In this document: positions 520 through 29,600 of the stretch, piece by piece | Layout of the letters: the number at the start of each line of letters is the position of its first letter | How positions within the stretch are numbered: the first letter of the stretch is position 1 | Source of the DNA: Salpingoeca rosetta | Taxonomy: Eukaryota; Protista; Choanoflagellata | Assembly (NCBI GenBank): GCA_033442325.1 | Contig: JAWQFM010000030.1 | Coordinates: 52,802-82,685, forward strand | Reading direction: 5' to 3' | Length of the DNA stretch: 29,884 nt | Translations under genes and position numbers: made by a program | The notes under the pieces: generated by a model | What the model was told of the DNA's origin: nothing | Databases searched by the model: none | Seen by the model: the letters and a program-made list of their open reading frames with translations, nothing else

Positions 520-3500
520 ATGTCCGGCGGAGAGAAGAGAGCAAGGGAGGAGGTGGAGGCGTTGCTGGCGCAGACGAAGGTGAAGGATGGGGTGAAGAAC
601 AAGATCAGGGCCATCGCCAACAACACGTGTCCGGGGGGAATAGAGTGAGTGCAAAAGCAACCAAAACGACGTGTTGCAACATGCATGCATGTGTTGGACA
701 CTAGGCCACAAGGACACTTCTTGTGGTTGTACTCGTGCTTATTCTCCCCCTCCCTCTCTGCTTGGCTTGTCCTTGTGTTGCAATGGGTGTGGTGTGGCTT
801 GCTGTTGGGTGTTCACGTGTGCGTGTCCTGTCCCCTCGCACCGCCTGGACACATCAACAGAGAGAGAGTGTGTGTGTGTGTGTTTGTGGCAGGTTGTGAC
901 TGACACCCTCATGTTTTTGCTGTCTCGATCCTCAGTCTTCTTGCTCATTTCATGACACACACCATTCATTTGTAATTACAGCTTGGGTGGTTATGGCCTC
1001 GGCGTCATTGAGGCGCGTGCGGTGGCCGAGGCGCTCAAGGACAACACCTGCCTCGAAACGCTCGAGTGCGTGGTGATGATGAATCTGCATCGTGTGATAT
1101 GCATGGTTGATTGGGATGGCGGTGTTGCATGTTGCACCCCTTTCTCCTCCCCTGCTTGCGCATGTTTGGACGTGTGTTCACCTTCGCTCCCTGCGTTTCC
1201 TTGTGTGCCTGCACAGCCTGGCAGTCAATTCCATCGGCGATGAGGGCGCTGTGGCGTTGGCGGAGATGCTGAAGCACAACACGGCCCTCAAACAACTCTA
1301 GTGAGTGTGTACACGCACACATGCACACATGTATGCTGCGTCACTGCCATTGCACCTTATCACGTGCACATGTGTGGTTGATGGGGTGGGGTTCAACGAC
1401 TGTGTTGACACCCACAACAATCATCATGACGCACGCATGTGGCATCATCCCCCTGTGTGGCATCCACCATACCGTCTTGACAGCCTGAGTGAGAACTCCA
1501 TCGGCCCTGAGGGCGCCGTGGCGTTGGCGGAGATGCTGAAGCACAACACGACCCTCACAGCACTCGAGTGAGTGGAAGCTCCTCTTTGCAATGTGTGTCT
1601 TTAGGCGCTTCTTCCGCAATACCCGTGTGCAGATGGAGGCACCGCAAGCCACCCACGATGTCTGTGCGACTTGCTTGTTTGACCAACAAATGCTTCCATC
1701 CTTCATATGTGCCACAAGTGCTGCCACATCCTGTGCAATTTGCATTTGCCCCCTTTGCTTCCGCCATTGTGACTTCAATGTCGTAGGACCTGATGTGCGA
1801 GCGAGTCCGCGTGCACGTGGTCCATCTGCAACCCACTTTTATCCATGACACTGACACGTGTTGCTTGCCCACCCGTTCCCCTGCTCTTCCAACATGCACT
1901 TCTTGCCACTTGCAGCTTGCGTAACAACTCCATCACCCCAGTTGGCGGTGCGGCGCTGGGTGCCGCACTGGACGAAAACCGCACGCTGGAAACACTCTGG
2001 TTTGTCGCTTGTGCTGCGCCTGCCTCATGAACGCCTGTGTCCTGTTGTGGATTTGTGTGACCAATCGCCACTCTTTTGAGTGCACGCCACACTGTGTGTT
2101 CCTCTTTACTTGCTTGCATTTCTCCACAACCCTCCTGACCAACCCTCCTGACGCACACACCACACTTGCTGCTTGTTCCCAACCACACACTACCACCACG
2201 TGTCCTCGTTCAGTATTCGGAAGAACTCCACCGCCACCGCCCGCGCCTTTGGTGCCGCGCTGCCCGTCGACCGAGAACTCATCACAGACTGGTCAGTCAA
2301 TGCGTGCTTCCACTCTAGTCGTTCGCTCCTTGCCTTCTCTCTACCCTTCACCTCACGCACACACGCTGCGTGATGCTTGCATCCAATGTCGCGTGGGATC
2401 ACAGGTTTGGCGACGATGAGGGCAACGCCGCCTTCGACGAAGCACGCGCGGAGAAGAAGCGGCAGCATGAGCAACTGTTTTCCGCCTGCAGGGATGGCGA
2501 CGCTCCCGCTGTCACGTCCCTCATCGAGCAGGACAATACAGACATCAACCAACAGGACAAGCAGGTATGTTCATTATGTGTGTGTGTGTGCTGTGCTTGT
2601 ATGTGAACGGCGCTCGCTCATGGTTGCACCGGCCGTGCGTTCGTTTCCAACAGATCCTCACCACACGTGCCATGCCCCTTGCTGCCCCCACCCATCCACA
2701 GGGCGACACGCCACTGCACGTTGCCTGCAGGCACAACCATCCCGCCGTCGTGGAGCTACTCCTGAAGAAGGGCGCAGACACTGCCGTCAAGAACAAGAAG
2801 GTGTGCTTCGCGTCGTGTTGCTGTTTCTGAAGACGTGACACGACTGCTTCTTTGCTTTGCGCTGTCCTCCCCCTCTCCCTGCTTCCCTCCTTCCTCAACT
2901 CATGCGTTTTACCTTTCCAACACACGCAGGGAGAGACGCCCTACGATGCGGCACAAGCCAGCGGCCACGCTGCCATCACCAGCATCCAAGGGCTGAAACC
3001 AGGCGGCAAGCCTTCGGAGCAACCACAGCAACAACAGCAGCAGCCAAAACAAGAGCCACCTGCGCCCACTCCTGCCGCCGGACCGAAGCAAGAAGAACAA
3101 GCAGCGCAAGACGTGAGTGATCAGAAGAGTGCTTGCTTGCAACGCACAAGCATATGCATCACGTCACCCATGCCATTCCTTCATCACGCTCTCCGTGGTC
3201 TCGTATCAAGCATAATCATGATGTCTCACACAACCATCACCACCACCACCACCAGCAGCAGCCCGAGCAGGCGCGCAGGGAGCGTCTCCAGCAGCGCATG
3301 CGGGAGGTCATAGCACGCTTCAACGCGACCATGGCGGGCAGGGCCAAACTCATCTTTATTGGTCAGGGGCGCGCCGGCAAGACTTCCACGTTCCACTCGC
3401 TCATGGGTCACATGTTCAACAAGCATGAGCACTCCACCCTTGGCGCCACCTCAACCGACCTCGCCGTCATTGTCGAATCAATGGACGTTCACGACTGGCA

Positions 3501-3650
3501 GGTGTGTACCCTTGTCTGGTGCGAGCATGTGATGTGTGCGACGCATGGGTGTGAAGAGAGGTGTTGTGAGTGACTCGATGACACGCACACACACACACGC
3601 ACGTACACACACACACACACACACACACATCCGCACACACACATACACAT

Positions 3651-3684
<34 letters not shown>

Positions 3685-6600
3685 CCTTTGCAGGAGCTGG
3701 ATGCGGAGATCTCGGAGTTGATGCGCAGCCTCTGCGGAACGGCGCTGGCGCAGGAATCTGGCGTGGACTTGCAGATGAAGCAGGCGATGATGAAGGCGAA
3801 GGCCGACTTGGGGAGCCGCGTTGCCCAGCACCAGCACCAACAGCGGCAACAAGAAGCCGAGAAGGCAGAGAAGGCAGCTGCTGCCAAACTGAAGCAAAGA
3901 CAGTCACAGCAGTCAATGGAGACGCGGTCACGGCCATCCTCCCGCACGTCATCATCGACCGTCCCAAAGCCCAGCAAGACGTCTCAGATGTCAGCATCTG
4001 CGCCCACGAAGCAGGCCACCCTAACCCCTTCCAGCCAAAGTGATGCTGCTGCGCGTGACAACAGCAGCAGCACCACGCCCGGCATGTCTGCTGAGGAAAT
4101 GGAGAAAGCGATCAAGGAGTTCAACATGGATGCCGTCATGGGCGAGGGCAAAGCACGGGTAACGTTCAAGATCTTTGACCTGGGCGGCCAGTCCACCTTC
4201 TACATCTTTCACCCTTTCTTCCTCACCAAGTGAGTACTTCTGTGTGTTGTGTGTGTGTGTGTGCGTGTGTGTGCGTGTGCGTGTGTGTGCGCATATCAGT
4301 CCCAGTGCACGTGTAATTGCTGTCACCCTAGATTCGGCACCCTCCACCTCACGGCCCCCCCACCCTACCTTCAACTCACACCCCCCCACCACACATACAA
4401 CCCACACCAGGTACGCGGTGTACCTGCTGGTGTTCTCCATGGAGGACCTGTTGCACGAAGACGAGAGCCATCGGGCAGAGGCGTGGGAGTTTATGGAGCA
4501 CTGGCTCTCCTCCCTCCACCTCCACGCAAAGGGCGCACCCGTCATCATCGTCGGCACCTTCGCTGATGTGGTCAGTCAGCGGAAGCAGCACGAGAACATC
4601 TCGCGTCACATCTACAGTCGCCTGCGCCACAATCCCGCCTTCCCTGGCGTCATCCACAACGACAAGCATGGGCTGTGGTTCTGGCCCGTCGACAACACCA
4701 AGTCCATCAATGACCCCATGATCCAGGACCTGCGCCAGACCATCTCCTCCACAGCACTGGCGCAGGAGTACGTGAGCCAGGAGGTGGCTGTGCCATATCT
4801 CCACCTCTACGACAAGCTCAACGCCATCGCCCGCGATGAAAAGCGGCCGCTGCTCACGTTTGATGAGGTGGTGCAGATTGCGCGCACATGTGGGCTGCGC
4901 ACACGTGAGGAGACAAGAGCCTGCCTGCAGTTCCTGCACTTGTACTCCATGGTGCTGTACTACGACAGCGTGCCTGGCATGGAGGACTGTGTGATCCTGA
5001 GTCCGCAGTGGGCGGTGGACATGATGACGCGCGTCATCCGCAACTTTGATCTGCACCACGACGTGCGTGATGGCAAGGCGAGGGCCGTTGGTGCCGACGT
5101 GTGGGACGACCTGGTTGACCGCGGCATCCTGCACCGCCGTCTACTTGATGTGCTGTGGAGGGACTTGGAAGGTGGCATGGTTGACCCGTTCCTCCAACTC
5201 ATGATGGAGTACGGGTTGTGTATCCGGTACACGGCACCAACGGTGCTGCTGCCCGGTCCTCAACAGCAACAACAACACCACCAACAGTACCTCGTCCCAG
5301 CCATCCTGCCGATGACGCTGGAGGACGAACAGGCGTCCTCGTCGGTGACTCTGAGCACGGCAGCAGCACAGCAAGCAAATCCGTATGTTGGATATGAGGA
5401 GAAGACAGCCTACGTCGCCTTCAGCCTGAGGGAGTTCAAGAGGGGTGTAAGCGCCAAGATTGCAGACACGCAGCAAGCCTCCTTCCTGCCAGAGGGCCTG
5501 TTCCCGATGGTTCTGGCACGCGTGATGGCACACATGCAACACGGTGCAGCAGAACCGCCCATGTTGAGCCGCACAGACGCCGTGATCTTCATGGACGTGG
5601 CTGAGATCGAGATGCAGCTCGTGCCGGCTGTTGGCGGCATCAAGATCAAGGTCATGACTGCACGTCCTCGCACGCTGCTGCACATGCTGTACGACACCAT
5701 CACTACAGCTGTCACGCAGCGCTACCCCGAGCTCAAGGCCACGTTGCTGCTGCCATTTAATGACACAAGGCTGCTGTTCTTCGAGGACGTGCACACCCAC
5801 CACACGAACAAGAAAGCGCTTCGCGTTGGCCGCTCACAGCTGCTGTCACCAGAGGATCTGGTCGCCAAATATGGTCCACTCTTGCCAGTTATGGGTCAGC
5901 AGGACAAATACGACGCCTTCATCAGTTACAGGTGGGACATGTGTGTGTGTGTATGTGTGTGTGTGTGCGTGCATGAGTGTGTGCATGAATGTATGGTGCG
6001 ATCTGGGTGTCTTTCCTTCCCTCTCTCTTCCTTTCTTATTTCGACATTCACCACCACGCCACAGGCAACGCGGCAACCGGGGTTTGGTGATGACCTTGTC
6101 CCCTAAGTTGGAACAGCACGGACTGGTGACCTTTGTGGACAGCAACAACTTGGAGACAGGCGTCAACTTCAAGTACGCGTGCATGGCAGCTCTTCAGCAC
6201 AGCGTGGTCGCCTGTCCCATCGTGTCTGTCGGTGCCATCCATCAGATGCAGCATCGCTCGGCCACACTGGACACTAGAGTGGACCCTGCGGTCACGGTCC
6301 CCGCGCCCCTAAGACTGACTTTGAATGGGTTTACATGCAACAATCCGTCTGATAATTTCCGCATGAGCCGCGGCCTGTGTTAAGAACTTGAGTACGATTG
6401 CAATCGTTCCGAGGGGTAACGTCTTGTTGGAGTGGATGCCGATGCTGGAGCTGCAGCAGCTTGCTCGCCCAGCATCCAGACAAGGTCCACCTCCGCCCGC
6501 ATCGTTCCGCTCTTCCTCGGCAGTGGCTGGCACGACAGCAGTCACCATGTTATGAGCGCGGGCGGAGGGTGAGCGAGTACGACTCGTTTGACCGCCTGAA

Positions 6601-6906
6601 GAGACTGGCAACGAAGTTGCCGGATGTTGTGAGCAAGAACACGGCGGCAGCGCTGGACCAGTTCTTTTCACAGGTGCTGCGATTGCCACCGCCCCAGCAG
6701 CACAAAGAGCGTGCGGGAAGTGGTGCTGTCGCTATTTGACATTGATGCGGTGATTGCGGTGGATGCCGGTGTGGACCGCACGTCGCAGCTGCGCGACATT
6801 GCGGAGAAGGTGCGCCAGGTCGTCGTCTCTGCCGGCAACGAGGAGCAAGCAGCACTGGGGCCAGGCACAGCGCGTGCATCCAAGAAGGTATGCGCGCTGT
6901 GCTGTG

Positions 6907-6965
<59 letters not shown>

Positions 6966-6978
6966 GGTGGGTGGGTGG

Positions 6979-7014
<36 letters not shown>

Positions 7015-7411
7015 GTGTATGCAGGCGCACTCTTTCCTCTCATCCACTTGGCGTGCGTGGTGTGTCTTGCTCAACCCCGCCAACTTGTCTGCCGTGCAGT
7101 CCTTCTTCTCCTCCTTCTCCACCTCCTTCTCCTCCACAACACCTGTTACACCGCTGCCCGCCACCCCTTCCTCCTCGTCCTCAAACTCATTCGAGCCGGC
7201 GCTGACTGCATGGCTCAAACGCCACTCGCTGCTACCGCACGTTAAGTCCGCGCTGATAGAACACAGCATCGACACGTTGGAGGTGCTGGTGGTGTCCATA
7301 CAAGAGGGTGACCTGACCAAGGAGGTACTCAGGGAAGCCGGTGTGAAAATTGGACCGGCAATCAAGCTGATTCGGGAGGCAAAGAAGTGTGACGTGGACA
7401 GTTTTGTGTAG
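520..7411 (+). CDS. Roco-family protein A (LRR-ankyrin-ROC-COR-TIR-SAM), multi-exon; TIR exon disrupted in this sequence (possible pseudogene or sequence error)
   Basis: Hand-spliced GT-AG exons with consistent phases: 520-644, 982-1065, 1217-1300, 1484-1567, 1916-1999, 2214-2291, 2405-2564, 2702-2800, 2930-3112, 3256-3501, 3694-4229, 4411-5931, 6065-6887 (disrupted), 7100-7411. Recognisable LRR, ankyrin (GDTPLHVAC), P-loop (GQGRAGKTS), COR-like, TIR-like (YDAFISYR) and SAM-like motifs. Confidence 0.85.
982..2291 (+). repeat. LRR exon array of Roco A: four 84-nt phase-2 exons plus one 78-nt capping exon
   Basis: Exons 982-1065, 1217-1300, 1484-1567 and 1916-1999 are each exactly 84 nt and encode one 28-aa ribonuclease-inhibitor-type LRR (e.g. 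[27 protein letters not shown]). Exon 2214-2291 is a degenerate 78-nt unit. Confidence 0.9.
2405..2990 (+). other. Ankyrin repeat region of Roco A (~2.5-3 repeats)
   Basis: [30 protein letters not shown] | [33 protein letters not shown] | [13 protein letters not shown]; the middle repeat is a 99-nt (33-aa) phase-0 exon at 2702-2800. Confidence 0.9.
3340..5880 (+). other. ROC GTPase plus COR domain of Roco A
   Basis: G1 GQGRAGKTS (3361-3387), G2 STLG, G3 FDLGGQ (DLGGQ at 4177-4191), YLLVF, G4-like VIIVGTFAD (GTFAD at 4553-4567). These are followed by COR-like motifs [41 protein letters not shown] and [13 protein letters not shown]. Confidence 0.85.
3581..3683. repeat. Intronic imperfect (CA)n microsatellite
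   Basis: Direct reading; lies in the intron that splits the ROC domain. Confidence 0.95.
5909..6760 (+). other. TIR-like domain of Roco A (interrupted and frameshifted)
   Basis: YDAFISYR|[54 protein letters not shown] matches TIR_2-type motifs. After an unrelated segment, NVLLEW (Glu codon 6430-6432) and, in shifted frames, RIVPLFLG continue the domain. Confidence 0.75.
6910..7018. repeat. Intronic (GT)n/(GGGT)n microsatellite
   Basis: Direct reading. Confidence 0.95.
7190..7390 (+). other. C-terminal SAM-like domain of Roco A
   Basis: [29 protein letters not shown]...[25 protein letters not shown] fits the SAM pattern WL..L..Y/V...F/L....ID...L...LT...L...G+..G....L. The exon at 7100 is in frame with the phase-0 donor at 6888. 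Confidence 0.7.
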
Positions 7412-13400: not shown

Positions 13401-16400
13401 AGTTAGTGTCGTTGGATGCACCACAACTGTGAGTGTGTGTACTTGTTGTGCACTTGTGTCAACCCTGGAGATGACGTGATATGGCTGTGTGTGCATGAGC
13501 CACCAAAGTGTCAAGCAGTGCGCTGTTGTTGTCTCCCCTGCCTTTGTTTTGCTTTCGTACCCTTACGCTTCCACTCACCACAACCTCACAACCCTACAAC
13601 CTCCTCCACCGAACCCCTCCACCAACCCCTTTATTCAGCTGCAAGCGCGCAAGCCAGTGTGGTGCTGGCCAGTACGTGAGCCGTGGCCCGTCACAGACAA
13701 CGGACCGCGTGTGCGGCTCGTGCTCTCTGGGCCGCACGTACCAGGACGCCAGCTCCCACACCTTTGGCAGCTGCAAGCCCGTGCGCAACTGCCCTGCTGG
13801 TACCTTTGTCGCCGCGGACCCCACCCTCAGCTCCGACCGCGTGTGCGGCAAGTGCCAGGAAGGCACATACTCCTCGGGCGTCAACGCGAAGCAGTGCGAG
13901 GACATTGGCACGTGCGATGCTGGCGAGTACGCCTTCTTCGCCTCGTCCACCTCGGGCGTGGACTGCCGCGCCTGCGCGCTTGGCTCCACCTACCAGGATG
14001 AGACAAACCACAACCGCCAGTCCTGCAAGACTGTGTCTCCCGAGTGCCCGGCGGGCCAGTTTCAGGCCGTTGCTCCAACCCGCTCCAACGACCGCGTCTG
14101 CAACGACTGTCACCCAGGTACCTTCTCTGATCGCCCTGGCGGTGACGAGTGCGACCCTCACACGCAGTGCGGTGCCGGTTTCATCGAGACCAGCCCCGCC
14201 ACGCCGACCTCCGACCGCGCCTGCCGTCGCTGCAACGGCGTCACGCAGTACCAGGACGAACTGCACCAGGCCTCGTGCAAGACCGTGCGCACGTGCTCTT
14301 CCACCCAGTACGAGACCACGGCGCCCAGCCCCTCCAACAACAGGGTGTGCGCCTCTTGCACCACCTCCTGCCCCAGCGGCAAGGTGCTTGTCGGCACCTG
14401 CGGTCCCACCACCGACAAGCGGTGCGAGTCGTGCCACCCGTCGTGCGCCACGTGTGACGGCACCACGGAGAACGACTGCCTCTCTTGCGCCGACTCAAGC
14501 CTCACCCTTCTGGACGGCCGCTGTGTCAACCCTGACTGCGGCGAAGGCGAATACCGCGACGGCGCAACCTGCAAGCCGTGTGACTCCTCTTGCGCCGAGT
14601 GTGACGGTGTGTGTGTGTTGTGTGCCGTGTTGTTGCTGTGTTGCGTGTGGGCGTGTGTTTGTTGCGTTGCTCGGTCTGCGTTGGGGGTTGCTGACGTCGC
14701 CCAGCTTGTTCCTGGTTCACTACTGATCACATATCACATGACTCCACACGTCAACACACAAAACACCACGCCCCAACACGACCACTCCAACCACTGACTC
14801 ACTCACTCTTTTTTGAACCACTCACCTCCCTCACCCCTTCCCTTTGTAGGCGCCGGTTCGAACCGCTGCATCTCGTGCAAGGGCGATCGCTACCTTGATG
14901 GCAACTCGTGCGTGACCAAGTGTCCGACTGGGTACTTCAAGTTCACCAACAGCGAGCGCGACAACGTCTGCCGCCGCTGCACCAGCTGTGATGACGGTAC
15001 GTTTGCCTCGACCCCTTGCGATGGCAGCACCTTCACCGACACGCAGTGCAGCCCATGGAGCACGTGCGACGAGGGCGAGGAGGAGGACACTCCACCCAAC
15101 AGCGTTCGCGACCGCGTGTGCCGCAAATGCGAGGCGGACAAGGAATACCAGGACCAGCCTGGCAAGCTCTTCTGCAAGTCTGTCAGCGTGTGCCAGCACG
15201 GCCAGTACGTGTCAACCGAACCCACCCTGACCACCGACCGCCAGTGTTCCGCTTGTGGCACGGGCACCTTCACCAATTCGGAGAACGCCGCGCGCTGCCT
15301 GCCCTGTGCTGCAGGTTCATTCCAGGACGAGACAAACTCCCCAAGCTGCCAGGAATGCGGCATCGGCATGTACGAGCCCGAGCAGGGCCAGACGCAGTGC
15401 GCGGAGATCCCGCCCGGCTACTACGGCGTCGGCGGCACCATCTCCACCCGCACGGGCATTGCCGAGTGCCCGCGTGGCTACTACTGCCTCGGCGGCTCCC
15501 ACGACAAGCAGGCCTGCCCGCCCAACCAGTACCAGTCCGAGACCGGCCAGAGCCAGTGCGTGGACCTCACCGTGTGCGGCGATGGCGAGCTTGTCTCCAA
15601 GGAGCCCACCAGCATCAGCGACCGCGAGTGCTCCCCTTGCCCCGACGGCACGTACCAGGACGACAACGACCACGACATGACCGAGTGCATTCCCTGGACC
15701 ACCTGTCCCGTCGGCACCCACATCTCTACCACAGGCAACGCTCGCCGCGACCAGTCGTGTGCCAGCTGCGACGCCCCGGAGACGTTCCAGGATAAGGAGA
15801 ACCAGCGCACGTGCAGGCCCGTCTCAGACTGCCCCGTCGGCACGGCTGAGCTTGTTGGCCCCACCCCCACCTCCGACCGCAAGTGCCGCGCTTGCCAGGT
15901 CGGTACCAACTACGCCGATGACACGGGCCTGGAGATTTGCAAGCCCGTCACCAACTGCCGCCCCGGCACGCGCGAGGTGGCCGCCCCAACAGCCAGCTCG
16001 GACCGCGTGTGCCAGGCCTGTGAGCCCAACACGTACACAGAGTCAGAGAACGAGAAGACGTGCCGTCCACACACGCTGTGCGGCGCCAGCGAGAAGGAGG
16101 TGGAGGAGCCCACCACTTCCAGCAACCGCCGCTGCGTGCGTTCTCAAGTAGGATATTCAGTGTAATAACTATGTGCTTGTTGCCCCAACACCTCACAAAA
16201 ATGTGCTACCATTGCCTCACCTCCACAATACCCGTTCCCCCACCCACTCTATTCCCTCATGTCAATTCGAACAGGGCTGCACTGGACCGGCAATTGACGA
16301 GTGCACGGCCTGCGGACCCAACCTGCAGCTGCGCAACGGCCGCTGCATCAGTGAGTGCCCCGATGGCGAGTATGAGCTCGGCAATGGATGTGCTGAATGC

Positions 16401-19380
16401 CACTCCACGTGTGCCGACTGTGATGGCCCGGACGCCACCAACTGCCTCCTGTGCGACGGCAACCTCAACCTCTGGGTCGACGAGCAAGGCCAGTCGTGCA
16501 TTGCCGATTGCCCTCCCGGCTACTACGCCAAGGACCACCGCTGCGTGCCATGCACCTCATGTGGCATGGGCACCTGGGCCTCCACCCCATGCTCCGCGTC
16601 ATCCGACGCCGTCTGCTCTCCCTGGACCGAGTGCAAGCCTGGCCAGAAGGAGTCCGTCTGTCTCTGGCAACGCCGTGCGCGACCGCGCGTGCGTGAGCTG
16701 CACCCTCGGCATGGAGTACCAGCCGCTGCCGGGCCGCACCTCGTGCTTCCCCACCAGCGTGTGCGAGGAGCCCTTCATCGAGACCATCCCGCCCACGCTC
16801 ACCACGGACCGCCTGTGCTCCTGTGACACGCTCACCTGCAACAAGTTCATCACGCAGCTGTTTGAGGAGATGGTGTGCGCCGAGCCCACGGACAAGCAGT
16901 TCGACGTCGTGCTTGATGTGTGCTGCTCCGGCCAGGGCGAGGATGGCATCCGCGACACCATTCGCCAGATGGACGCCTACGAGGCACGCCGTTCCTGCCC
17001 GGGTTGCACAGACACGTGCGAGTGCAGCGCTGGCTTCATCCTTGTCTTCGACGCCGACTCGGCTGACTGCCGCCCGTGCGACGGCGTGACGGAGTTCTCC
17101 CCATCCATTGGTGGCAGCAAATGTGAGCCCATTGAGGAGTGCGAGCGCGGCCAAGAGGAGGTGTCCGCGCCAACCTGCTGCTCCTCGGACCGCGTGTGCC
17201 GCGACTGCCTAGCCGGCACCATCGACAAAGACAGCGCCGGCTCCACGGGTTGTCAGATGTGCCCCGCCGGCCACTACACGGAGGCGGGCTTCCACGGCTC
17301 CTGCTCCAGCTTCACCTGCCGCGCAGGCACCCACGACCACGACAGCGACGCCGCCACGCCGTGCCAGCCGTGCGTCTTTGGTATCACGTACCAGGACGAG
17401 GAGGGCCAGACCACGTGCAAGGACGTGACAGAGTGCGCGCCCGGTTTTGAGGAAGTGCAAGCGATGACGCTTATCAGCGACCGCGTCTGCGACGAGTGCC
17501 CAGAGGGCACATACAAGGCTATCTCTGGCCAGGGCGTGCCCTGCCTCCCCGTCACCACGTGCGATGCTGGCGACGAAGAGACGGCCGAGCCCACCCCCAC
17601 GAGCGACCGCGTGTGCAGCCAGTGCGAGCTTGGCGCCACCTTCAAGCCCGTCGACGGCCAGGCCGAGTCGTGCCGCCCCGTCACGCAGTGCGGCCCGGAT
17701 GAGGAAGAGATTCGCGAGCCCACGCGCCAGCATGACCGCCTCTGCCGCAAGTGCGTCCAGGACATTACCTACCGCCCCGCCGGCTCAGACACGTGCGTGC
17801 CCGTGTCGCGTTGCGCGGCCTCAGAGTACAATTCCACGCACGCCACGCTCACCACGGATGTGGAGTGCACGGCCGTGAGCAACTGTGAGTTTTGGCACCT
17901 TCCAGAGCCAGGCGCCCACGCTCGACTCTGACCGCGAGTACGCTGGAGTGTTCCGAGTGCCCCAGTGGCCGCTACGAGATTCGCGCCTGCTCTGCGCTGG
18001 AGAACGTGCAGTGCGCCGGTTGCTCTGCGTGCCCGCCGAACACATACATCCTGCGCGCATGCGACTCGGAGAATGACGTGTCGTGCCAGCAGTGCAGCAC
18101 GTGCTCTGATGAGCAGTACCGCAGCGCACCATGCACCGCCACCAGCGACACGGAGTGCACGACGCTCGACGTGTGCGACCAGGACCAGTTTGAGCTGTTC
18201 CCCGCCACACCAACCACGGACCGCATCTGCCGCGACCTGAGCCAGCGCAACCCGACGACGGAGTACGAGCGCACCGCCTGTGCCACCTCATTTCCAAGTG
18301 CGACCCTGGCGAGCAGCGCATCCGCGCGCCCACCTCCACCTCCGACGCCAAGTGCGAGCCGTGCCCCATCGGCACCACCGACCACGACCGCAACCCGCTC
18401 ACCGCCTGCCAGCCGTGTCCCTATGGCCACTATGTGCCTACGGGATCCATCGGCTCCTGCGAGCAGTTCCTGTGCCCAGCCGGCACCGCCGACCTGGACC
18501 GCAACGCCAGCACGCCGTGCACGCCGTGCCAGGCTGGCGTGGACTTTGCCGCCCTCTCTGGCCAACGCGATTGCACGCCTGTGACGGAGTGCGACCTCAG
18601 CTGTCATCAGGGGGTGCGCCCTACCATGCACCCCACCATCTTCACGGACCGCCAGTGCCGCCGCTGCATCGAGGGCCTGTTCTACCGCGACAGCAACATG
18701 GACTTCTGCACACGCGAGTGTCGCCCTGTGAGCCTGGCTCGTTTGAGACGGCAGCGCCCACCACCATCAGCACGGACCGCGAGTGCCAGATGGGCCACAC
18801 GTGCCCCAACAACACCACGTTCATCTCGCGCCCGCTCACGCCCACGACGTAGAACCACAGGCATCTGCTCGCCGTGCACGCAGTGCCTGTGCAACAAAGT
18901 ACGAACTCGTTGCGCCGTCGCTGGTCAACGACCGTGAGTGCCAGCGAGTATGCGCTCGTGCCAGGACACGGAGTGCGAGGTGTCGGCGCCCACAGCCACG
19001 ACGGACCGCCTCTGGGCCACCATCAGCACCTGCCCCATGGAGCAGTTTGAGGTGCTCCCGCCCACCACCACCTCGGACCGTGCGTGCGCGCCCGCGTACT
19101 CTGTCTCGCTCATCTTTGATGCCAAGTTCAACGCCCTTGCCGGCACACAGTCGCGCCGCGAGGCGTTTGAGGCCGCGCTGGTGCAGTCCATCAACACGAC
19201 GCAGGACGCGTCGCAGATTCATTCTGCGCATCGACCTGCGCCAGGGCTCCATCATTGCTACCATCCCCTCCCTGAACGAGGACATTACGGCGTGCCTCTT
19301 CAACCGGTCCGTCTCTTGTGACATGACCGTCATGGCCTTCACCGCATCGCCGTGCGAGGCCGACGCGTTCCTGGAACCTC
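10404..19380 (+). CDS. Large secreted/cell-surface cysteine-rich protein (signal peptide, dermatopontin-like domain, TNFR/furin-like Cys repeats, SEA-like domain); 3' part frameshifted and end unresolved
   Basis: Phase-consistent exons: 10404-10448 (MAIFLSLLTVASVLL), 10623-10657, 10953-11041, 11180-11212, 11374-11503, 11739-11868, 12066-12104, 12277-12398, 12523-12630, 12871-13380, 13639-14606, 14850-~16135, 16275-~19380. Apparent frameshifts near 16660, 17890-17950, 18245-18300, 18590-18960 and 19215. Confidence 0.8.
10623..12398 (+). other. Dermatopontin-like three-repeat domain
   Basis: The spliced product has three repeats: GWANNFGGYLSFTCPSNQVLDGWYGVFSNSRLDRRYSFRC; GYENSYYGGFTKTYPNGQAIYRIQAGHSDGYRDRRWRIGC; WSGWTNNW...SFTANSKYVIHGVQSDFSYTFRDRRWRFYQC. 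The DRxW/YxFxC motif is characteristic of dermatopontin and amebocyte aggregation factor proteins. Confidence 0.7.
12523..19095 (+). repeat. Tandem Cys-rich protein repeats (TNFR-like / ephrin-receptor-like / furin-like)
   Basis: Dozens of units of the form C..G......PT.TSDR.C..C..G.YQD......C, interspersed with furin-like units such as CHPSCATCDGTTENDCLSC, CDSSCAECDG and CHSTCADCDGPDATNCLLC. Confidence 0.85.
19096..19330 (+). other. SEA-like module with GSII motif
   Basis: YSVSLIFDAKFNALAGTQSRREAFEAALVQSINTT followed, after a frameshift, by FILRIDLRQGSIIATI (GS at 19245-19250). This resembles the SEA beta-alpha-beta fold and its GSVVV motif. Confidence 0.5.
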
Positions 19381-21340: not shown

Positions 21341-22225
21341 CCACCGCGTTGGTGAGCGTAGCCACTACCGCTGATCCATGCATGGAGTGCAATGGTGGCT
21401 GGTGGTTGGTTGAGTGTGGTTGGTTGGTTGAGTGAGATGTGAGTGAGTGTTGGAGAGGGAAGGGGAACACGGGCTGAGGGGACGGAGGAAGGAAGGAGGA
21501 AGGAGGGTGGAAAGAAGGGAAATGGTGCTGTGGGTGGTGGAGGTTGTGTAGTCACACCAGTCGCACCAGTCAGTCAGTGGGAGAGAGAAGAGAGGGAAAG
21601 GAAAGGAAGTGGTGCACACTTCTGCACGTGGCATGGAGCAGCAGCACTCTCACCAGAGCAGAGAAGAGAGAGGAGAGAGGAGGGGAGAGGAGGGGAGAGA
21701 CTGAGAGAGGAGAGGGGAGAGGAGGCACTGCAGCACAGTCAATTCATCCACTGGCTGGTTGGGTGGTTTGTTGAGAGTGGTGGTTGTTGTGGGGAAAAAC
21801 AAACAAAGGAGAAGGAAGGAAAGGACAGCTGGCTGGCTGCATTGTGGAGGAAGATATGGGGAGTTTTCGTGGCTGGCGAGAGAGGAATGGTGGTGGAAGT
21901 CTTGATGTACTTTTCGTGGGGTGCGCCCAAGAAAGGCACACAGCAAGCAACACAAGAAGAGAAGGGAATCAGCAAGCACTGCAAGCAGGCGTGGGTTGTT
22001 TGGTTTGTGGTGTGTCCTCTCCAACTCCATTTCTAGATTTCTGCGTCGTTCCAGGTCTCACAGCACCCCAGCCACAACAAACAACAAGCAAGGGACAGAA
22101 GAGGGCAGAGAGGGAGGAGGAGAACAGACAAGGAGGAGACAGGGGAGATGGGTGACACCCACAGCAAGGCAGAGGGAGAGGGAAGAGAACCTGCCAACGC
22201 AAAGAACGCAAAAACAACAACAGCC

Positions 22226-23346
22226 ATGTCCGGCGGAGAGAAGTGGACGAGGGAGGAGCTGGAAGCCTTGCTGGCACAGACGAAGATGTGGCAAAGGGTG
22301 AAGGACAAGATCAGGGCCATCGCCAACAACACGTGTGGGGAAGCTGTCGAGTGAGTGCGAGCAACAACGACATGACATGTGTGTGCATGTTGGAGAAAAG
22401 AAAGAAGAGCACTCGCTGTGCTTCTTGACCACCCTGCTTCGCACGTCCTTGTCTTGCTTGAGTTGTTGTGTGTTGCTTGGCGTTCCTGTGCTTGCGTGTC
22501 CGATCGCACAACCTGGCCACATAAACGGAGAGTGTGTTTGTGGCAGTTTGTGACCTGCACCCTCACGTTTGCTCTCTTTCACTCTCATGACACACGATTT
22601 TGAATCACAGCTTCATGGGTGCTTCCTTTGACGCCGTTGGGGCGCGTGCAGTGGCCGAGGCGCTCAAGGACAACACCTGCGTCAAACGACTCTTGTACGC
22701 GGTGATGTGAGCTGCATTGTATGACACGCATGGTTGATTGTGTTGGTGTTGCATGCTCCTCCTCATTCATGTCTCTTCTTCTTCACACTTTGGATGTGCT
22801 CAACTTTGCTGCCTGCATTCTTGTGTGCACAGCCTGCGTGACAACTCCATCGGCCCTGAAGGCGCCGTAGCGTTGGCGGAGATGCTGAAGCACAACACAA
22901 CCATCACAGTACTTTTGTGAGTGTGAGCGCACACGTGCATTGAAAGACACTTGCTTTGAACATATGCTTGTGTGTGCTTGTATGGTTTTGTGTGTGCAGG
23001 TTCAACGGCTGTTTGCCACCCACTGTGCCCGTCACCCACTCATCACTCATCACCACCGCGTATGCTGTCATCCACCTCCTCCTCTCTCGTGTGTGTGTGT
23101 ACAGCCTGGATAGCAACTCCATCGGCGACGAGGGCGCCATGGCGTTGGCGGAGGTGCTGAAGCACAGCACGCCCCTTAAAGGACTTTAGTAAGTGTGGGC
23201 ATGTACATGCATTGCGAGACATTCGCTTGGAGCATGCGTGCGTGTGTGTTCCTGTGTGCAGACTCAACGACTGTTCACCACCTACTGTGCCCGTCACCCA
23301 CTCATCCCTCCTCATCACCGGGTATGTCATCAACCACTCGCTCCTA

Positions 23347-23423
<77 letters not shown>

Positions 23424-24627
23424 ACCGATTAAGCAATTGGTCGGAATTTCCATTAACGAAGAAACAAATTTTACCACATACCCAACCCACCGGCGTGTAC
23501 GTAGACTGCGGTTTTACACCGTTAACTGATAGGACTGACTGTGGTGGAGTCAGAATCACGTCAGGCCACGTACGGAAAAGTCTGCTCTTGCTACCGTGGA
23601 ACACTGGTGGGGACACACAATCTTTACGGTGGCTTACCAAAGGATGAGATGAAGCACAACGCGACCCTCAAGACATTCGAGTGAGTGAAGACATGCACGT
23701 GCGTCGGAGTCACTTGGTTTGAGCGTGTGATCATGAGCTTTGTGTGTGGTTTGCTGTGCAGCAAGTTCAACGGCTGTTCGCTACCCGAATGTAGTTATCA
23801 CCACTCATCACTCCTCACCACTACGTACGCTGTCATCAACCGCTCACTCCCAGCCTGGGGAGCAACGGCATTTGTGACCAGGGTGCTGTGGCGTTAGCGG
23901 AGATGCTAAAGCACAACACAGCCATCACACGACTCGTGTAAGAGCCGGCACGCACATGTATTGAAGGACATGGAGCGTGTGCGTGTTTGGTTTTTGATGC
24001 ACAGGCTCAACGGATGCTTGTCACTCACCGTGTGTCCGTCACTCATCACCCCTCAACCCCACGTACGCTACCATCAACTTCCACTCCTCCCATCTTATCT
24101 CTTGTGTGCACAGCCTGCGTGACAACTCCATCGGCCCTGAAGGCGCCGTAGCGTTGGCGGAGATGCTGAAGCACAACACAACCATCACAGTACTTTTGTG
24201 AGTGTGAGCGCACACGTGCATTGAAAGACACTTGCTTTGAACATATGCTTGTGTGTGCTTGTATGGTTTTGTGTGTGCAGGTTCAACGGCTGTTTGCCAC
24301 CCACTGTGCCCGTCACCCACTCATCACTCATCACCACCGCGTATGCTGTCATCCACCTCCTCCTCTCTCGTGTGTGTGTGTACAGCCTGGATAGCAACTC
24401 CATCGGCGACGAGGGCGCCATGGCGTTGGCGGAGGTGCTGAAGCACAGCACGCCCCTTAAAGGACTTTAGTAAGTGTGGGCATGTACATGCATTGCGAGA
24501 CATTCGCTTGGAGCATGCGTGCGTGTGTGTTCCTGTGTGCAGACTCAACGACTGTTCACCACCTACTGTGCCCGTCACCCACTCATCCCTCCTCATCACC
24601 GGGTATGTCATCAACCACTCGCTCCTA

Positions 24628-24698
<71 letters not shown>

Positions 24699-27102
24699 CC
24701 CCTCTCCCTCTCTCTTCTCTTGTGTGCACAGCCTGGGCGACAATGGCATCGGTGACCAGGGTGCTGTGGCACTGATGGAGATGCTGAAGCACAACACGAC
24801 CCTCGAAGAGCTGTTGTGAGAGTTTCATTCAAGGCGCCCACTCTGAGCGTGTGCTTGTTTAGTTGCGTTTGCTTTTGTTGTGCAGGAGGCTCAACGGCTG
24901 TTTGCCACCGTGTGCTCGTCATTCACTCATCACTCCTCACCACCGTGTATGCTCTCGTCGACCTCCCACTCCTCTCTGTCTCTCTCACACACTCCCTCAC
25001 ACATGCACACACTCACTCTCCCCCCCCACACACACACACTCTCTCTCTTGTGTGTCCACAGCCTGTACCGCAACTCCATCTACGATGAGGGTGCCGTGGC
25101 GCTGGCGGAGATGCTGAAGCACAACACAACCCTCACATATCTCGAGTGAGTCAGACATGCACATGCATTGAAGGCGCCAGCTTTGAGCGTGTGCTTGTTT
25201 GGTTGTGTTTGGTTTCGTGTGCAGCAGGCTCAACGGCTGTTTGCCGCTCACCATTTGCTCGTCACCCACTCATCACTCATCACCACCGCGTGTGCTGTCA
25301 TTCACCTCCTTCTCTCTCTTGTATGTGCGCAGCCTGGGTGGCAATTCCATCAGCGATGAGGGTGTTGTGGCGTTGGTGGAGATGAAGCACAACGCGACCC
25401 TCAAGACATTCGAGTGAGTGAAGACATGCACGTGCGTCGGAGTCACTTGGTTTGAGCGTGTGATCATGAGCTTTGTGTGTGGTTTGCTGTGCAGCAAGTT
25501 CAACGGCTGTTCGCTACCCGAATGTAGTTATCACCACTCATCACTCCTCACCACTACGTACGCTGTCATCAACCGCTCACTCCCAGCCTGGGGAGCAACG
25601 GCATTTGTGACCAGGGTGCTGTGGCGTTAGCGGAGATGCTAAAGCACAACACAGCCATCACACGACTCGTGTAAGAGCCGGCACGCACATGTATTGAAGG
25701 ACATGGAGCGTGTGCGTGTTTGGTTTTTGATGCACAGGCTCAACGGATGCTTGTCACTCACCGTGTGTCCGTCACTCATCACCCCTCAACCCCACGTACG
25801 CTACCATCAACTTNNNNNNNNNNNNNNNNNNNNNNNNNNNNNNNNNNNNNNNNNNNNNNNNNNNNNNNNNNNNNNNNNNNNNNNNNNNNNNNNNNNNNNN
25901 NNNNNNNNNNNNNNNNNNNNNNNNNNNNNNNNNNNNNNNNNNNNNNNNNNNNNNNNNNNNNNNNNNNNNNNNNNNNNNNNNNNNNNNNNNNNNNNNNNNN
26001 NNNNNNNNNNNNNNNNNNNNNNNNNNNNNNNNNNNNNNNNNNNNNNNNNNNNNNNNNNNNNNNNNNNNNNNNNNNNNNNNNNNNNNNNNNNNNNNNNNNN
26101 NNNNNNNNNNNNNNNNNNNNNNNNNNNNNNNNNNNNNNNNNNNNNNNNNNNNNNNNNNNNNNNNNNNNNNNNNNNNNNNNNNNNNNNNNNNNNNNNNNNN
26201 NNNNNNNNNNNNNNNNNNNNNNNNNNNNNNNNNNNNNNNNNNNNNNNNNNNNNNNNNNNNNNNNNNNNNNNNNNNNNNNNNNNNNNNNNNNNNNNNNNNN
26301 NNNNNNNNNNNNNNNNNNNNNNNNNNNNNNNNNNNNNNNNNNNNNNNNNNNNNNNNNNNNNNNNNNNNNNNNNNNNNNNNNNNNNNNNNNNNNNNNNNNN
26401 NNNNNNNNNNNNNNNNNNNNNNNNNNNNNNNNNNNNNNNNNNNNNNNNNNNNNNNNNNNNNNNNNNNNNNNNNNNNNNNNNNNNNNNNNNNNNNNNNNNN
26501 NNNNNNNNNNNNNNNNNNNNNNNNNNNNNNNNNNNNNNNNNNNNNNNNNNNNNNNNNNNNNNNNNNNNNNNNNNNNNNNNNNNNNNNNNNNNNNNNNNNN
26601 NNNNNNNNNNNNNNNNNNNNNNNNNNNNNNNNNNNNNNNNNNNNNNNNNNNNNNNNNNNNNNNNNNNNNNNNNNNNNNNNNNNNNNNNNNNNNCAGCGGC
26701 AGCAGGAAGCCGACAAGGCAGAGAAAGCAGCAGCTGCCAAACTGAAGCAAAGACAGTTGCAGAATGCAAAGGAGACACAGCCACGGCCATCATCCAAGAA
26801 GCCACCACCGACCGTCCCCAAACCCACCAAGGCATCTCATGACTCAGCATCTGCGCCCACGAAGCAGGCCACCCTAAACCCTTCCAGCCAAAGTGATTCT
26901 GCTGCCGGCAATTACAACAACACCGCCACCGCCACGACCGGCATGTCTGCGGAGGAGATGGAGAAGGCGATCAAAGAATTCAACGTGGACGCCGTCATGG
27001 GCGAGGGCAAAGCGCGTGTCACGTTCAAGGTGTTTGACCTGGGCGGTCAGTCCACCTTCTACATCTTCCACCCTTTCTTCCTCACCAAGTGAGTAGGATG
27101 CA

Positions 27103-27146
<44 letters not shown>

Positions 27147-27159
27147 CTTGCGTGCGTGT

Positions 27160-27206
<47 letters not shown>

Positions 27207-28694
27207 ATCACCGCTCCCCTCAACAACCCCACTTCCGCTCACCCTCCCCTCCTTACCCCCATCTTCACCCACCCGCAAACAGGTACGCGGTGTACCTGCT
27301 GGTGTTCTCAATGGAGGACCTGTTGCACCAAGACAAGAGCAAGCGGGCTGAATCGTGGGAGTTTATGGAGCACTGGCTCTCCGCCCTCCACCTCCACGCC
27401 AAGGGCGCACCCGTCCTCATCGTCGGCACCTTCGCTGACAAGATCAACGAGAGGAAGCAGCATGAGCAGATATCACGCGACATCTACAGCCGCCTGCGCC
27501 ACAACCCGGCCTTCCCTGGCGTCGTCCACAACGACAAGCATGGTCTGTGGTTCTGGCCCGTCGACAACACCAAGTCCATCAATGACCCCATGATTCAGGA
27601 CTTGCGCCAGTCCATCTCCTCCACAGCCTTAGCGCAGGAGTACGTGAGCCAGGAGGTGGCTGTGCCATACCTCCATCTCTACGACAAACTGATGGCACTG
27701 AGCAAGGACGACAAACGGCCGCTGCTCACCTTTGATGAGGTGGTGGATATTGGACGCACGTGTGGGCTGCGCACACGTGAGGAGACGAGGGCCTGCCTGC
27801 AGTTCCTGCACCTGTACTCCATGGTGTTGTACTACGACAGCGTGCCTGGCATGGAAGATTATGTGATCCTGAGCCCGCAGTGGGCGGTGGACACGATGAC
27901 GCGCGTCATCCGAAACTTTGATCTGCATCACGACGTGCGTGATGGTGCGGCAAGGGCCATTGGCGCGCAGCTGTGGGACGACCTGGTTGACCGCGGTATC
28001 CTGCACCGCCGTCTACTTGATGTGCTGTGGAGGGGCTTGGAAGGTGGCATGGTTGAGCCCTTTCTCCAACTCATGATGGAGTACGGGTTGTGTATCCAGT
28101 ACACGGCGCCAATGGTGCTGCTGCCCGGTCCTCAACAGCAACAACAACACCACCAACAGTACCTCGTCCCAGCCATCCTGCCGATGACGCTGGAGGACGA
28201 ACAGGCGTCCTCGTCGGTGACTCTGAGCACGGCAGCAGCACAGCAAGCAAATCCGTATGTTGGATATGAGGAGAAGACAGCCTACGTCGCCTTCAGCCTG
28301 AGGGAGTTCAAGAGGGGTGTAAGCGCCAAGATTGCAGACACGCAGCAAGCCTCCTTCCTGCCAGAGGGCCTGTTCCCGATGGTTCTGGCACGCGTGATGG
28401 CACACATGCAGCACGGTGCAACGGAACCGCCCATGTTGAGCCGCACAGACGCCGTGATCTTCATGGATGCTGCTGAGATCGAGATGCAGCTCGTGCCGGC
28501 TGTTGGCGGCATCAAGATCAAGGTCATGACTGCACGTCCTCGCACGCTGCTGCACATGCTGTACGACACCATCACTACAGCTGTCATGCAGCGCTACCCC
28601 GAGCTCAAGGCCACGTTGCTGCTGCCATTCAATGACACGAGACTGCTGTTCTTCGAGGACGTGCACACCCACCACACGAACAAGAAAGCGCTTC
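22226..28694 (+). CDS. Roco-family protein B, paralog of A with an expanded LRR array; incomplete because of assembly gaps
   Basis: Exon 1 at 22226-22350 (125 nt, [20 protein letters not shown]...[10 protein letters not shown]) matches A exon 1. LRR exons lie at 22611-25670. After the gap, the ROC exon (26694-27088, [19 protein letters not shown]) and the ROC-COR exon (27283-28694+) are colinear with A. Linking the two halves across the gap is an inference. Confidence 0.75.
22611..25813 (+). repeat. LRR exon-cassette array of Roco B with a ~1733-bp six-exon higher-order repeat
   Basis: Exons: 22611-22694 (cap), A 22833-22916, B 23105-23188, partial E ~23646-23680, F 23854-23937, A' 24114-24197, B' 24386-24469, C 24732-24815, D 25062-25145, E' 25333-25413 (81 nt), F' 25587-25670. 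A/A' and B/B' are offset by 1281 bp and F/F' by 1733 bp. The copies look identical, introns included. Confidence 0.9.
23350..23420. repeat. (CT)n microsatellite in the LRR-B intron
   Basis: Direct reading; homologous tracts at ~24631-24720 and ~29474-29617 differ in length. Confidence 0.95.
25814..26693. other. Assembly gap (880 N)
   Basis: Run of N. Confidence 1.
27106..27202. repeat. Intronic (GT)n microsatellite
   Basis: Direct reading; the homologous intron in gene A has a shorter GT-rich tract at ~4240-4290. Confidence 0.95.

Positions 28695-29113: not shown

Positions 29114-29600
<487 letters not shown>

What the first reader, a model, noticed from the sequence alone, without database searches (positions are those of the whole stretch)
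22611..25670. The intron splits the hypervariable LRR beta-strand, and every cassette is freely interchangeable
All full LRR exons begin with C after the AG and end two bases into a codon. The junction codon is therefore NN+C and can never be a stop, so any order stays in frame. Variation concentrates at the junction-spanning LxxLx|LxxN strand: VKRLF|LRDN, ITVLF|LDSN, LKGLY|LGDN, LEELF|LYRN, LTYLD|LGGN, LKTFD|LGSN, ITRLV|LRDN in B, and LETLD|LAVN, LKQLY|LSEN, LTALD|LRNN in A. The helix core ([13 protein letters not shown]) is much more conserved, also at DNA level. Each ligand-facing strand is built from two exons, so reordering or skipping creates new surfaces. 84-nt LRR exons are also known from animal NOD1/NOD2/NLRC-type genes.
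Basis: partly seen in the sequence, partly recalled or inferred. Interest (0 to 1): 0.75.

Follow-up and report, generated by a model that had tools for sequence, protein, structure and literature searches.

The report
Hypervariable one-repeat-per-exon LRR sensor array
The stretch is the sensor end of a Salpingoeca rosetta Roco GTPase gene in which each 84-base exon encodes one NOD2-like leucine-rich repeat and only the ligand-facing codons around the splice junction evolve fast; this design is known from brown-algal Roco and animal NOD/NLRC genes, and I found no paper describing it in a choanoflagellate.

Summary
In the window, 14 LRR exons are exactly 84 nt and one is 81 nt. All are flanked by AG and GT, start with C and end two bases into a codon. 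In 21 further arrays of the same genome, 155 of 160 cassettes have AG..GT and 151 of 155 start with C.

Amino-acid entropy is 3.1-3.7 bits at unit positions 2, 3, 26 and 28 (the junction codon) and at most 1.1 bits over positions 10-24, the helix and its C-terminal flank. pN exceeds the pooled pS (0.27) at positions 2, 3, 5, 8, 25, 26 and 28. An AlphaFold2 model places the strand on positions 26-28 plus 1-2, so the intron lies in its middle codon.

Frame safety is arithmetic and is already published for NOD/NLRC and brown-algal ROCO genes. Cis-splicing cannot reorder exons, and exon skipping is untested. The data point to germline patchwork exchange between near-identical exon-intron units under diversifying selection, in a mostly scaffold-end family of at least 23 Roco genes.

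Part of array B is a near-identical duplicate that ends at microsatellites or N gaps, probably an assembly artefact.

The scan has already found this family on other DNA of this genome. I class it as a new member of a known kind.

The parts
22148..22350 (+). Gene B (public model PTSG_13066) first coding exon. It starts MGDTHSK and ends two bases into a codon.
   Evidence: The translation equals the N-terminus of P0001.
22611..22694 (+). N-cap LRR cassette of gene B (84 nt, AG|C...|GT).
22833..23188 (+). Two central cassettes (22833-22916 and 23105-23188) with their intron. This is copy 1 of a 99.8% identical duplicate of 24114-24469.
23421..23645 (+). 225-nt unique insert after a (CT)n run. 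It replaces 24699-25378 in copy 1 and joins into the middle of an exon.
   Evidence: the only match in the genome is itself.
23646..24080 (+). Truncated 3' end of the 81-nt exon, an intron, cassette 23854-23937 and part of the next intron. 100% identical to 25379-25813.
24114..25670 (+). The contiguous run of six cassettes: 24114-24197, 24386-24469, 24732-24815, 25062-25145, 25333-25413 (81 nt) and 25587-25670. Introns are 187-262 nt.
   Evidence: LRR_6 matches.
25814..26693 (.). Assembly gap (880 N) that cuts the LRR array off from the rest of gene B.
26694..28694 (+). Roc-COR part of gene B, 88% identical to 3841-5822 of gene A.
   Evidence: Pfam on P0001 (Roc 3.2e-9, COR-A 2.1e-17).
29114..29564 (+). 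Stray third copy of intron-cassette-intron (cassette 29229-29312). It lies after a 419-N gap and out of gene order, and it ends in a (CT)n run.
   Evidence: The public model P0001 ends in it.
520..1999 (+). Gene A: first exon (520-644), N-cap cassette 982-1065, central cassettes 1217-1300 and 1484-1567, and C-cap cassette 1916-1999.
2471..7408 (+). Rest of gene A: ankyrin repeat, Roc, COR-A and COR-B, weak TIR_2 and weak SAM_2.
   Evidence: Ank 2.2e-10, Roc 2.3e-6, COR-A 5.7e-19, COR-B 1.5e-4, TIR_2 0.023, SAM_2 0.011. Paralogues reach TIR_2 4e-6.

Best explanation
The stretch is the N-terminal sensor domain of a Salpingoeca rosetta Roco gene (PTSG_13066). Gene A, in the same window, is a paralogue.

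Anatomy (shown). The domain is a NOD2/ribonuclease-inhibitor-type LRR solenoid. Each 28-residue repeat is encoded by one 84-nt exon. The intron sits after the second base of the middle codon of the beta-strand. The gene belongs to a family of at least 23 arrays, each with an N-cap cassette and 1-9 central cassettes, most also with a C-cap cassette. Most of them lie within 100 kb of scaffold ends.

Mechanism (inferred). Diversity arises in the germline. The roughly 270-bp exon-plus-intron units are similar enough, introns included, to allow unequal crossing-over and short-tract exchange within and between arrays. Equal length, equal phase and a constant first base keep any gain, loss or swap of units in frame. 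Diversifying selection acts on seven outward-facing codons (25, 26, 28 | 2, 3, 5, 8), while the scaffold residues and the helix are held constant.

Function (inferred). The products are probably cytosolic, and possibly N-myristoylated in gene B. They would bind variable ligands on the concave face and signal through Roc-COR to TIR, PARP-like, PNP or SAM ends, like an innate immune or non-self receptor repertoire.
For: - Exon geometry.
- Domain content.
- NOD2 (5irm) is the best solved match to the repeats, E 6e-31.
- Organism and gene names.
- Entropy profile.
- Nei-Gojobori distances: dN at positions 2, 3, 26 and 28 is 1.20 against dS of the remaining codons 0.285, a ratio of 4.2.
- Bootstrapped pN exceeds pooled pS (0.271, interval 0.243-0.302) at positions 2, 3, 5, 8, 25, 26 and 28.
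- Mean pairwise difference is 0.66 at hypervariable first and second bases, against 0.31 in introns and 0.19 at fourfold sites.
- Introns align across 80 copies.
- Central cassette number varies from 1 to 9 among paralogues.
- Mosaic history. In pairs with near-identical introns, the hypervariable codons next to that intron are similar (0.21 and 0.14) while the distal ones are not (0.56 and 0.52). Upstream and downstream introns share a nearest relative for 1 of 60 exons.
- AF2 model of paralogue P0198: pLDDT 72-89 over the LRRs, strands on positions 26-28 plus 1-2, helix on positions 7-20.
- 18 of 21 arrays lie within 100 kb of a scaffold end, against 15% of scaffold length.
Against: - No expression, binding or population data exist here. 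The receptor role is inferred from architecture only.
- pS may be lowered by gene conversion or codon bias, which would overstate the pN/pS excess.
- The pairwise counts ignore phylogeny and recombination. No likelihood site model was run.
- Hypervariable sites are near saturation, so the rates are rough.
- The intron-centred tract result rests on 11 non-independent pairs. Whole-exon linkage is also above chance: 5 observed against 0.9 expected.
- Array B is interrupted by gaps and duplicates, so its true cassette order is uncertain.
Confidence: 0.72

Rival explanations
1. The cassettes are used combinatorially at RNA level: regulated or stochastic exon skipping of the frame-safe 84-nt exons yields many receptor isoforms per gene, each with new composite strands.
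For: - Every skip is in frame and stop-free.
- Three of ten public gene models omit cassettes in frame: P0175 skips cassettes 1 and 3, P0198 skips four and P0216 skips five.
- There are precedents in human NLRP3 (PMC6642158) and in Ectocarpus ROCO transcripts (PMC11378527).
Against: - No transcript reads were available.
- Six of ten public models keep every cassette in order.
- The skips in P0198 and P0216 join cassettes whose 3' ends are identical to those of the true upstream neighbour. That is what short-read or predictor ambiguity would produce.
- All splice sites are canonical and alike, with no visible selector element.
- Cis-splicing cannot reorder exons.
Confidence: 0.15
2. The variable codons are merely unconstrained surface positions drifting neutrally. 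Nothing selects for diversity.
For: The x positions of LxxLxLxxN are variable in most LRR proteins.
Against: - They differ far more than introns and fourfold sites of the same units: 0.66 against 0.31 and 0.19.
- pN exceeds pS with bootstrap support at seven sites.
- Other exposed helix positions (E16, M17, K19, H20) are nearly invariant.
- Trp and Tyr are strongly enriched at positions 2, 26 and 28.
Confidence: 0.05
3. The repeated block inside array B (22819-24080 against 24100-25813, plus 29114-29564) is a real, very recent higher-order tandem duplication and not an assembly artefact.
For: 99.8-100% identity over 599 and 435 nt. Tandem duplication is how the family grows.
Against: - The two matching blocks have different offsets (1281 and 1733 nt).
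- Every copy ends at a (CT)n run or at an N gap.
- Copy 1 carries a 225-nt sequence found nowhere else and joins mid-exon.
- Copy 3 lies after the Roc-COR exons, out of gene order.
Confidence: 0.3

Closest known systems
Brown-algal LRR-ROCO candidate receptors (Ectocarpus, Saccharina; PMC3341825, PMC11378527)
   Same: LRR-Roc-COR chassis. One LRR per exon, all exons of one length and in phase 2. Cassette number varies between paralogues. Positive selection acts on a few concave-face sites. The same proposal of shuffling and alternative splicing has been made.
   Different: - The algal exons are 72 nt (24-residue LRRs). Here they are 84 nt (28-residue RI/NOD2-type repeats).
- Algal ROCOs end after COR. 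These carry ankyrin repeats and TIR, PARP-like, PNP or SAM ends.
- Ectocarpus has inverted or inactivated LRR relics in its introns. None was seen among the 160 cassettes here: all were found on one strand per locus, the strand of the array.
- Here the introns themselves are alignable family-wide.
Vertebrate and cnidarian NOD1/NOD2/NLRC3-type LRR domains (PMC6642158; PDB 5irm)
   Same: RI-type 28-residue repeats. One repeat per 84-nt exon. The exon border lies at a fixed place inside the beta-strand. NOD2 is the best solved match (E 6e-31), and NLRC3-like NACHT proteins are among the best database matches.
   Different: The switch domain is Roc-COR, not NACHT. No NACHT was found in the scanned gene A segments, in gene B's public model (P0001) or in the paralogues. 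I did not compare the exact intron phase or codon with animal genes.
Lamprey variable lymphocyte receptors
   Same: LRR cassettes with a constant scaffold and a hypervariable concave face.
   Different: VLR genes are assembled somatically from flanking cassettes by gene conversion. Here complete arrays are germline encoded, and nothing points to somatic change.
LRRK2-type metazoan Roco proteins
   Same: Ank-LRR-Roc-COR order. The Roc domain of P0001 matches LRRK2 Roc structures (E about 4e-9).
   Different: The LRR type differs, there is no kinase in gene A or B, and the family is large and hypervariable.

Membership tests
Roco proteins | Roc GTPase domain directly followed by a COR domain | tested here: met
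   Gene A: Roc 2.3e-6, COR-A 5.7e-19, COR-B 1.5e-4. Gene B model P0001: Roc 3.2e-9, COR-A 2.1e-17.
RI-type (LRR_6) leucine-rich repeats | 28-29-residue period with strand LxxLxLxxN followed by a helix | tested here: met
   28-codon units. LRR_6 5.6e-17 on P0001. Matches to NOD2, NLRP3 and ribonuclease inhibitor. The AF2 model shows one strand and one helix per unit.
NLR (NACHT-LRR) receptors | NACHT or NB-ARC STAND ATPase next to the LRRs | tested here: not met
   No NACHT or NB-ARC hit in the scanned exons of gene A, in P0001 or in paralogues P0002-P0005. Roc-COR occupies that place.
Exon-shuffled LRR-ROCO receptors (brown-algal kind) | One LRR per exon, with exons of identical length and symmetric phase | tested here: met
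   155 of 160 cassettes are 84 nt with AG..GT, all in phase 2.
Exon-shuffled LRR-ROCO receptors (brown-algal kind) | Cassette number and content differ between paralogues, with signs of exchange | tested here: met
   1-9 central cassettes per array. Identical introns sit next to different exons, and the history is mosaic.
Exon-shuffled LRR-ROCO receptors (brown-algal kind) | Positive selection on concave-face residues | tested here: met
   pN exceeds pS at positions 2, 3, 5, 8, 25, 26 and 28, mapped to the strand and its flanks. This is a counting method only; no likelihood site model was run.
Exon-shuffled LRR-ROCO receptors (brown-algal kind) | Alternative splicing of LRR exons | not testable with these tools
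   No RNA reads were available. Public models that skip cassettes are ambiguous.
Exon-shuffled LRR-ROCO receptors (brown-algal kind) | Inverted or inactivated LRR relics inside introns | tested here: not met
   In each of the 21 sequences scanned on both strands, cassettes scoring 10 or more were found on one strand only, the strand of the array. Only 3 frame-damaged cassettes were seen: L013 2953, L021 2630 and L009 5246.

The most novel reading that the evidence does not exclude
S. rosetta may diversify these receptors within a clonal lineage. This could happen by stochastic in-frame skipping of the identical-phase LRR exons, or by mitotic ectopic recombination between scaffold-end arrays. 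Sister cells would then carry different receptor surfaces: a somatic-type repertoire generator in a unicellular relative of animals, built on NOD2-type repeats.
Probability: 0.08. Interest if true: 0.85.

Novelty: new member of a known kind. Interest (0 to 1): 0.5.

Why it matters
Choanoflagellates are the closest living relatives of animals. A large, fast-evolving family that joins NOD2/NLRC-type repeats (with the same one-repeat-per-exon layout) to a Roc-COR switch and TIR, PARP-like or PNP ends would have two consequences.

- The modular NLRC-type LRR sensor would predate animals or have arisen in parallel, and it can be mounted on a different switch.
- S. rosetta, which is genetically tractable, would offer an experimental system for asking what such hypervariable cytosolic receptors recognise.

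The specific point of this finding, frame-safe cassettes with the intron inside the strand, is already established for NLR and brown-algal ROCO genes.

Tried and rejected
1. A hidden 60-nt exon inside each intron. A block beginning YTCAACGRCTGT is flanked by AG and GT. I rejected it: its frame relative to the neighbouring exons is not conserved between units, and in one unit the junction would read TAA.
2. The same intron block as a selected element. Introns as a whole differ more (0.31) than fourfold sites (0.19), so common descent is enough to explain it.
3. The beta-strand (exon end, intron, next exon start) as the inherited module in place of the exon. Linkage is above chance both across the intron (9 observed against 1.2 expected) and within the exon (5 against 0.9). 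Neither is the exclusive unit.
4. Stop avoidance as the reason for the constant C. NNT is equally safe and synonymous, yet T occurs once in 155. The site is no more conserved than the third bases of H20 or N21.
5. The 225-nt insert as a repeat or transposon end. It is unique in the genome.
6. Literature searches for the choanoflagellate family found nothing specific.
7. Joined spliced protein. I did not build one for any search. Exons were searched one by one by reference, and public protein models returned by the tools stood in for the spliced product.
Full report
**What the window is**

The window is G000:C30:52802-82685 of a 55.4-Mb eukaryotic assembly. Paralogues of its genes are named Salpingoeca rosetta in public records, and gene B is the public model PTSG_13066 (P0001). 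It is not human. Introns are of the GT..AG type and 130-450 nt long.

**Checking the observation**

Boundaries were read base by base.
- Gene B begins at ATG 22148. Its first exon, 22148-22350, ends two bases into a codon.
- It continues with an N-cap cassette at 22611 and central cassettes at 22833, 23105, 23854, 24114, 24386, 24732, 25062, 25333 (81 nt) and 25587.
- Gene A has cassettes at 982, 1217, 1484 and 1916.
- Every cassette is preceded by cAG, starts with C and ends after the second base of a codon.

**Assembly problems in array B**

- 22819-23417 is 99.8% identical to 24100-24698. 23646-24080 is 100% identical to 25379-25813. 29114-29564 is 99% identical to 24271-24720.
- The two block offsets differ (1281 and 1733 nt).
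- Each copy ends in a (CT)n run or at an N gap.
- Copy 1 carries a 225-nt sequence found nowhere else in the genome and joins mid-exon.
- Copy 3 lies beyond the Roc-COR exons, after a gap.
- I take these as probable scaffolding artefacts, leaving 7 distinct cassettes in B. The public model reads through introns and jumps the gaps.

**What the genes are**

- Pfam on gene A, searched as stop-free stretches of the window by reference, gives LRR_6, Ank, Roc, COR-A and COR-B, with weak TIR_2 and SAM_2.
- Paralogue models show LRR_6, Ank, Roc and COR-A, then TIR_2 or a PNP_UDP_1 end. Precomputed Pfam annotation lists a PARP catalytic domain for a further paralogue, P0216. None has a NACHT domain.
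- The LRRs match rabbit NOD2 (5irm) best among solved structures, at E 6e-31. NLRP3 and ribonuclease inhibitor follow.
- NLRC3-like NACHT proteins of cnidarians and vertebrates are among the best database matches.
- A Salpingoeca infusionum transcript has the same LRR_6-Roc-COR-TIR layout.

**The family**

- A DNA search of the genome found many similar arrays. I fetched 20 regions and found 160 cassettes. Of these, 155 have AG..GT and 151 of those start with C.
- They form 23 arrays. Each has an N-cap cassette and 1-9 central cassettes, and most also have a distinct C-cap cassette.
- 18 of 21 arrays outside the window lie within 100 kb of a scaffold end, where 15% of the sequence lies. The window itself lies 53-83 kb from the start of C30.

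**Where variation sits**

I number the unit 1-27 for the exon's whole codons and 28 for the junction codon.

- The 105 distinct central cassettes have amino-acid entropy of 3.73, 3.18, 3.50 and 3.09 bits at positions 2, 3, 26 and 28.
- Entropy is 1.8-2.0 bits at positions 5, 8, 9 and 25, and at most 1.14 bits at positions 10-24.
- Third positions of the helix codons are also quiet, so the core is conserved at DNA level.
- Trp and Tyr are common at positions 2, 26 and 28.

**Rates**

- Nei-Gojobori counts give dN 1.20 at positions 2, 3, 26 and 28, against dS 0.285 for the conserved codons.
- With a bootstrap over cassettes, pN exceeds the pooled pS (0.271; interval 0.243-0.302) at positions 2, 3, 5, 8, 25, 26 and 28.
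- Introns between central cassettes align across 80 copies.
- Mean pairwise difference is 0.31 in introns, 0.19 at fourfold sites, 0.075 at first and second bases of conserved codons, and 0.66 at first and second bases of the hypervariable codons.
- Relaxed constraint alone cannot give more change than these neutral proxies.
- Caveat: gene conversion may lower the proxies, and no likelihood site model was run.

**Structure**

Instead I folded the public model of a paralogue (P0198) with four relatives as its alignment.

- The LRR part has pLDDT 72-89. The rest of the model is unreliable.
- DSSP puts the strand on unit positions 26-28 and, in the first repeats, positions 1-2 of the next unit. 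The helix covers positions 7-20.
- The intron therefore falls in the middle codon of the strand.
- By the alternation rule of LRR strands (established knowledge), L27 and L1 point into the core, and positions 26, 28 and 2 point to the concave face.

**How the cassettes change**

- Pairs of units with identical downstream introns often share the exon's 3' end but not its 5' end.
- For the 11 closest intron pairs, the hypervariable codons next to the intron differ at 0.21 and 0.14, and the distal ones at 0.56 and 0.52.
- Across 60 exons with both flanking introns, the nearest relative by upstream intron is also the nearest by downstream intron only once. Near-identical upstream introns go with downstream introns that differ by 0.146.
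- The history is thus a patchwork finer than one cassette. That fits short-tract exchange and unequal crossing-over between the similar units. The exon is not a discrete module.
- Linkage is above chance both within exons and across introns.

**The splicing idea**

- Frame safety follows from equal length and equal phase.
- Because the first base is constant, the junction residue is fixed by the upstream exon alone.
- Only three G-starting cassettes could make a stop, and only behind a TA-ending cassette.
- NNT would be as safe as NNC but is nearly absent, so stop avoidance does not explain the C.
- Cis-splicing cannot reorder exons.
- Of ten public models I could match to arrays, six keep all cassettes and three skip some in frame.
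  - Two of these skips, in P0198 and P0216, join cassettes with identical 3' ends, as repeat ambiguity would produce.
  - P0175 skips cassettes 1 and 3 without that excuse.
  - This is a lead, not evidence.

**What is known**

- Hoss et al. 2019 (PMC6642158) state three things. In NLR genes the exon border always lies at the same place in the beta-sheet. NOD and NLRC genes have one 28-residue LRR per exon. [quoted passage not shown]
- Zambounis et al. 2012 (PMC3341825) and Teng et al. 2024 (PMC11378527) describe brown-algal LRR-ROCO genes. These have one 72-nt phase-2 exon per LRR, exon shuffling, positive selection on four concave sites and splice variants.
- Searches for the choanoflagellate family found nothing.
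- The scan's own notes show that other agents reached the same reading for other arrays of this genome. One lead from there, the scaffold-end location, I checked myself.

**Verdict**

This is a new member of a known kind of receptor design. It is of moderate interest because of where choanoflagellates sit in the tree.

Noticed in passing
window 23421-23645: A 225-nt sequence follows a (CT)n run, replaces about 680 nt of the array in copy 1 and joins into the middle of an exon. It has no other copy in the genome.
   Followed up: partly
window 24816-25586 and 29229-29312 (public model P0001): The public gene model PTSG_13066 translates through two introns, jumps both N gaps and ends in the stray cassette at 29229. 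It needs re-annotation after the assembly is repaired.
   Followed up: partly
window 13499-18581 (+): A very GC-rich gene (62-67% GC) between the two Roco genes has many TNFR_c6 cysteine-rich repeats (E down to 2e-38) and an ephrin-receptor-like repeat.
   Followed up: partly
window 22148-22170; also P0198: Gene B and one paralogue start with MGDTHSK, which fits the MGxxxS/T N-myristoylation pattern. Most paralogues start with MSGGEKR instead, and gene B contains that start 26 residues further in.
   Followed up: no
L009-L028 (G000 scaffolds C2-C36): 18 of 21 further arrays lie within 100 kb of a scaffold end (median 32 kb). This suggests a subtelomeric family, where ectopic exchange is expected.
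   Followed up: yes
introns of array B, e.g. window 23010-23069, 24281-24340, 25228-25290: Each intron carries a block beginning YTCAACGRCTGT just after an internal AG, about 95 nt before the 3' splice site. An AG-free C/T-rich tract follows it. It is shared with gene A's intron at about 1392. It could be a distant branch-point region or only common descent.
   Followed up: partly
L013 2953-3036, L021 2630-2716, L009 5246-5329: Three damaged cassettes lie inside otherwise intact arrays: one frame-shifted, one lacking a codon and with a shifted acceptor, and one lacking the GT donor.
   Followed up: no
window 5909-7411: The C-terminal end of gene A starts a TIR-like domain right after COR (motif YDAFISYRW at the exon end), followed by a weak SAM_2 match. 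Paralogues give a clearer TIR_2 hit.
   Followed up: partly
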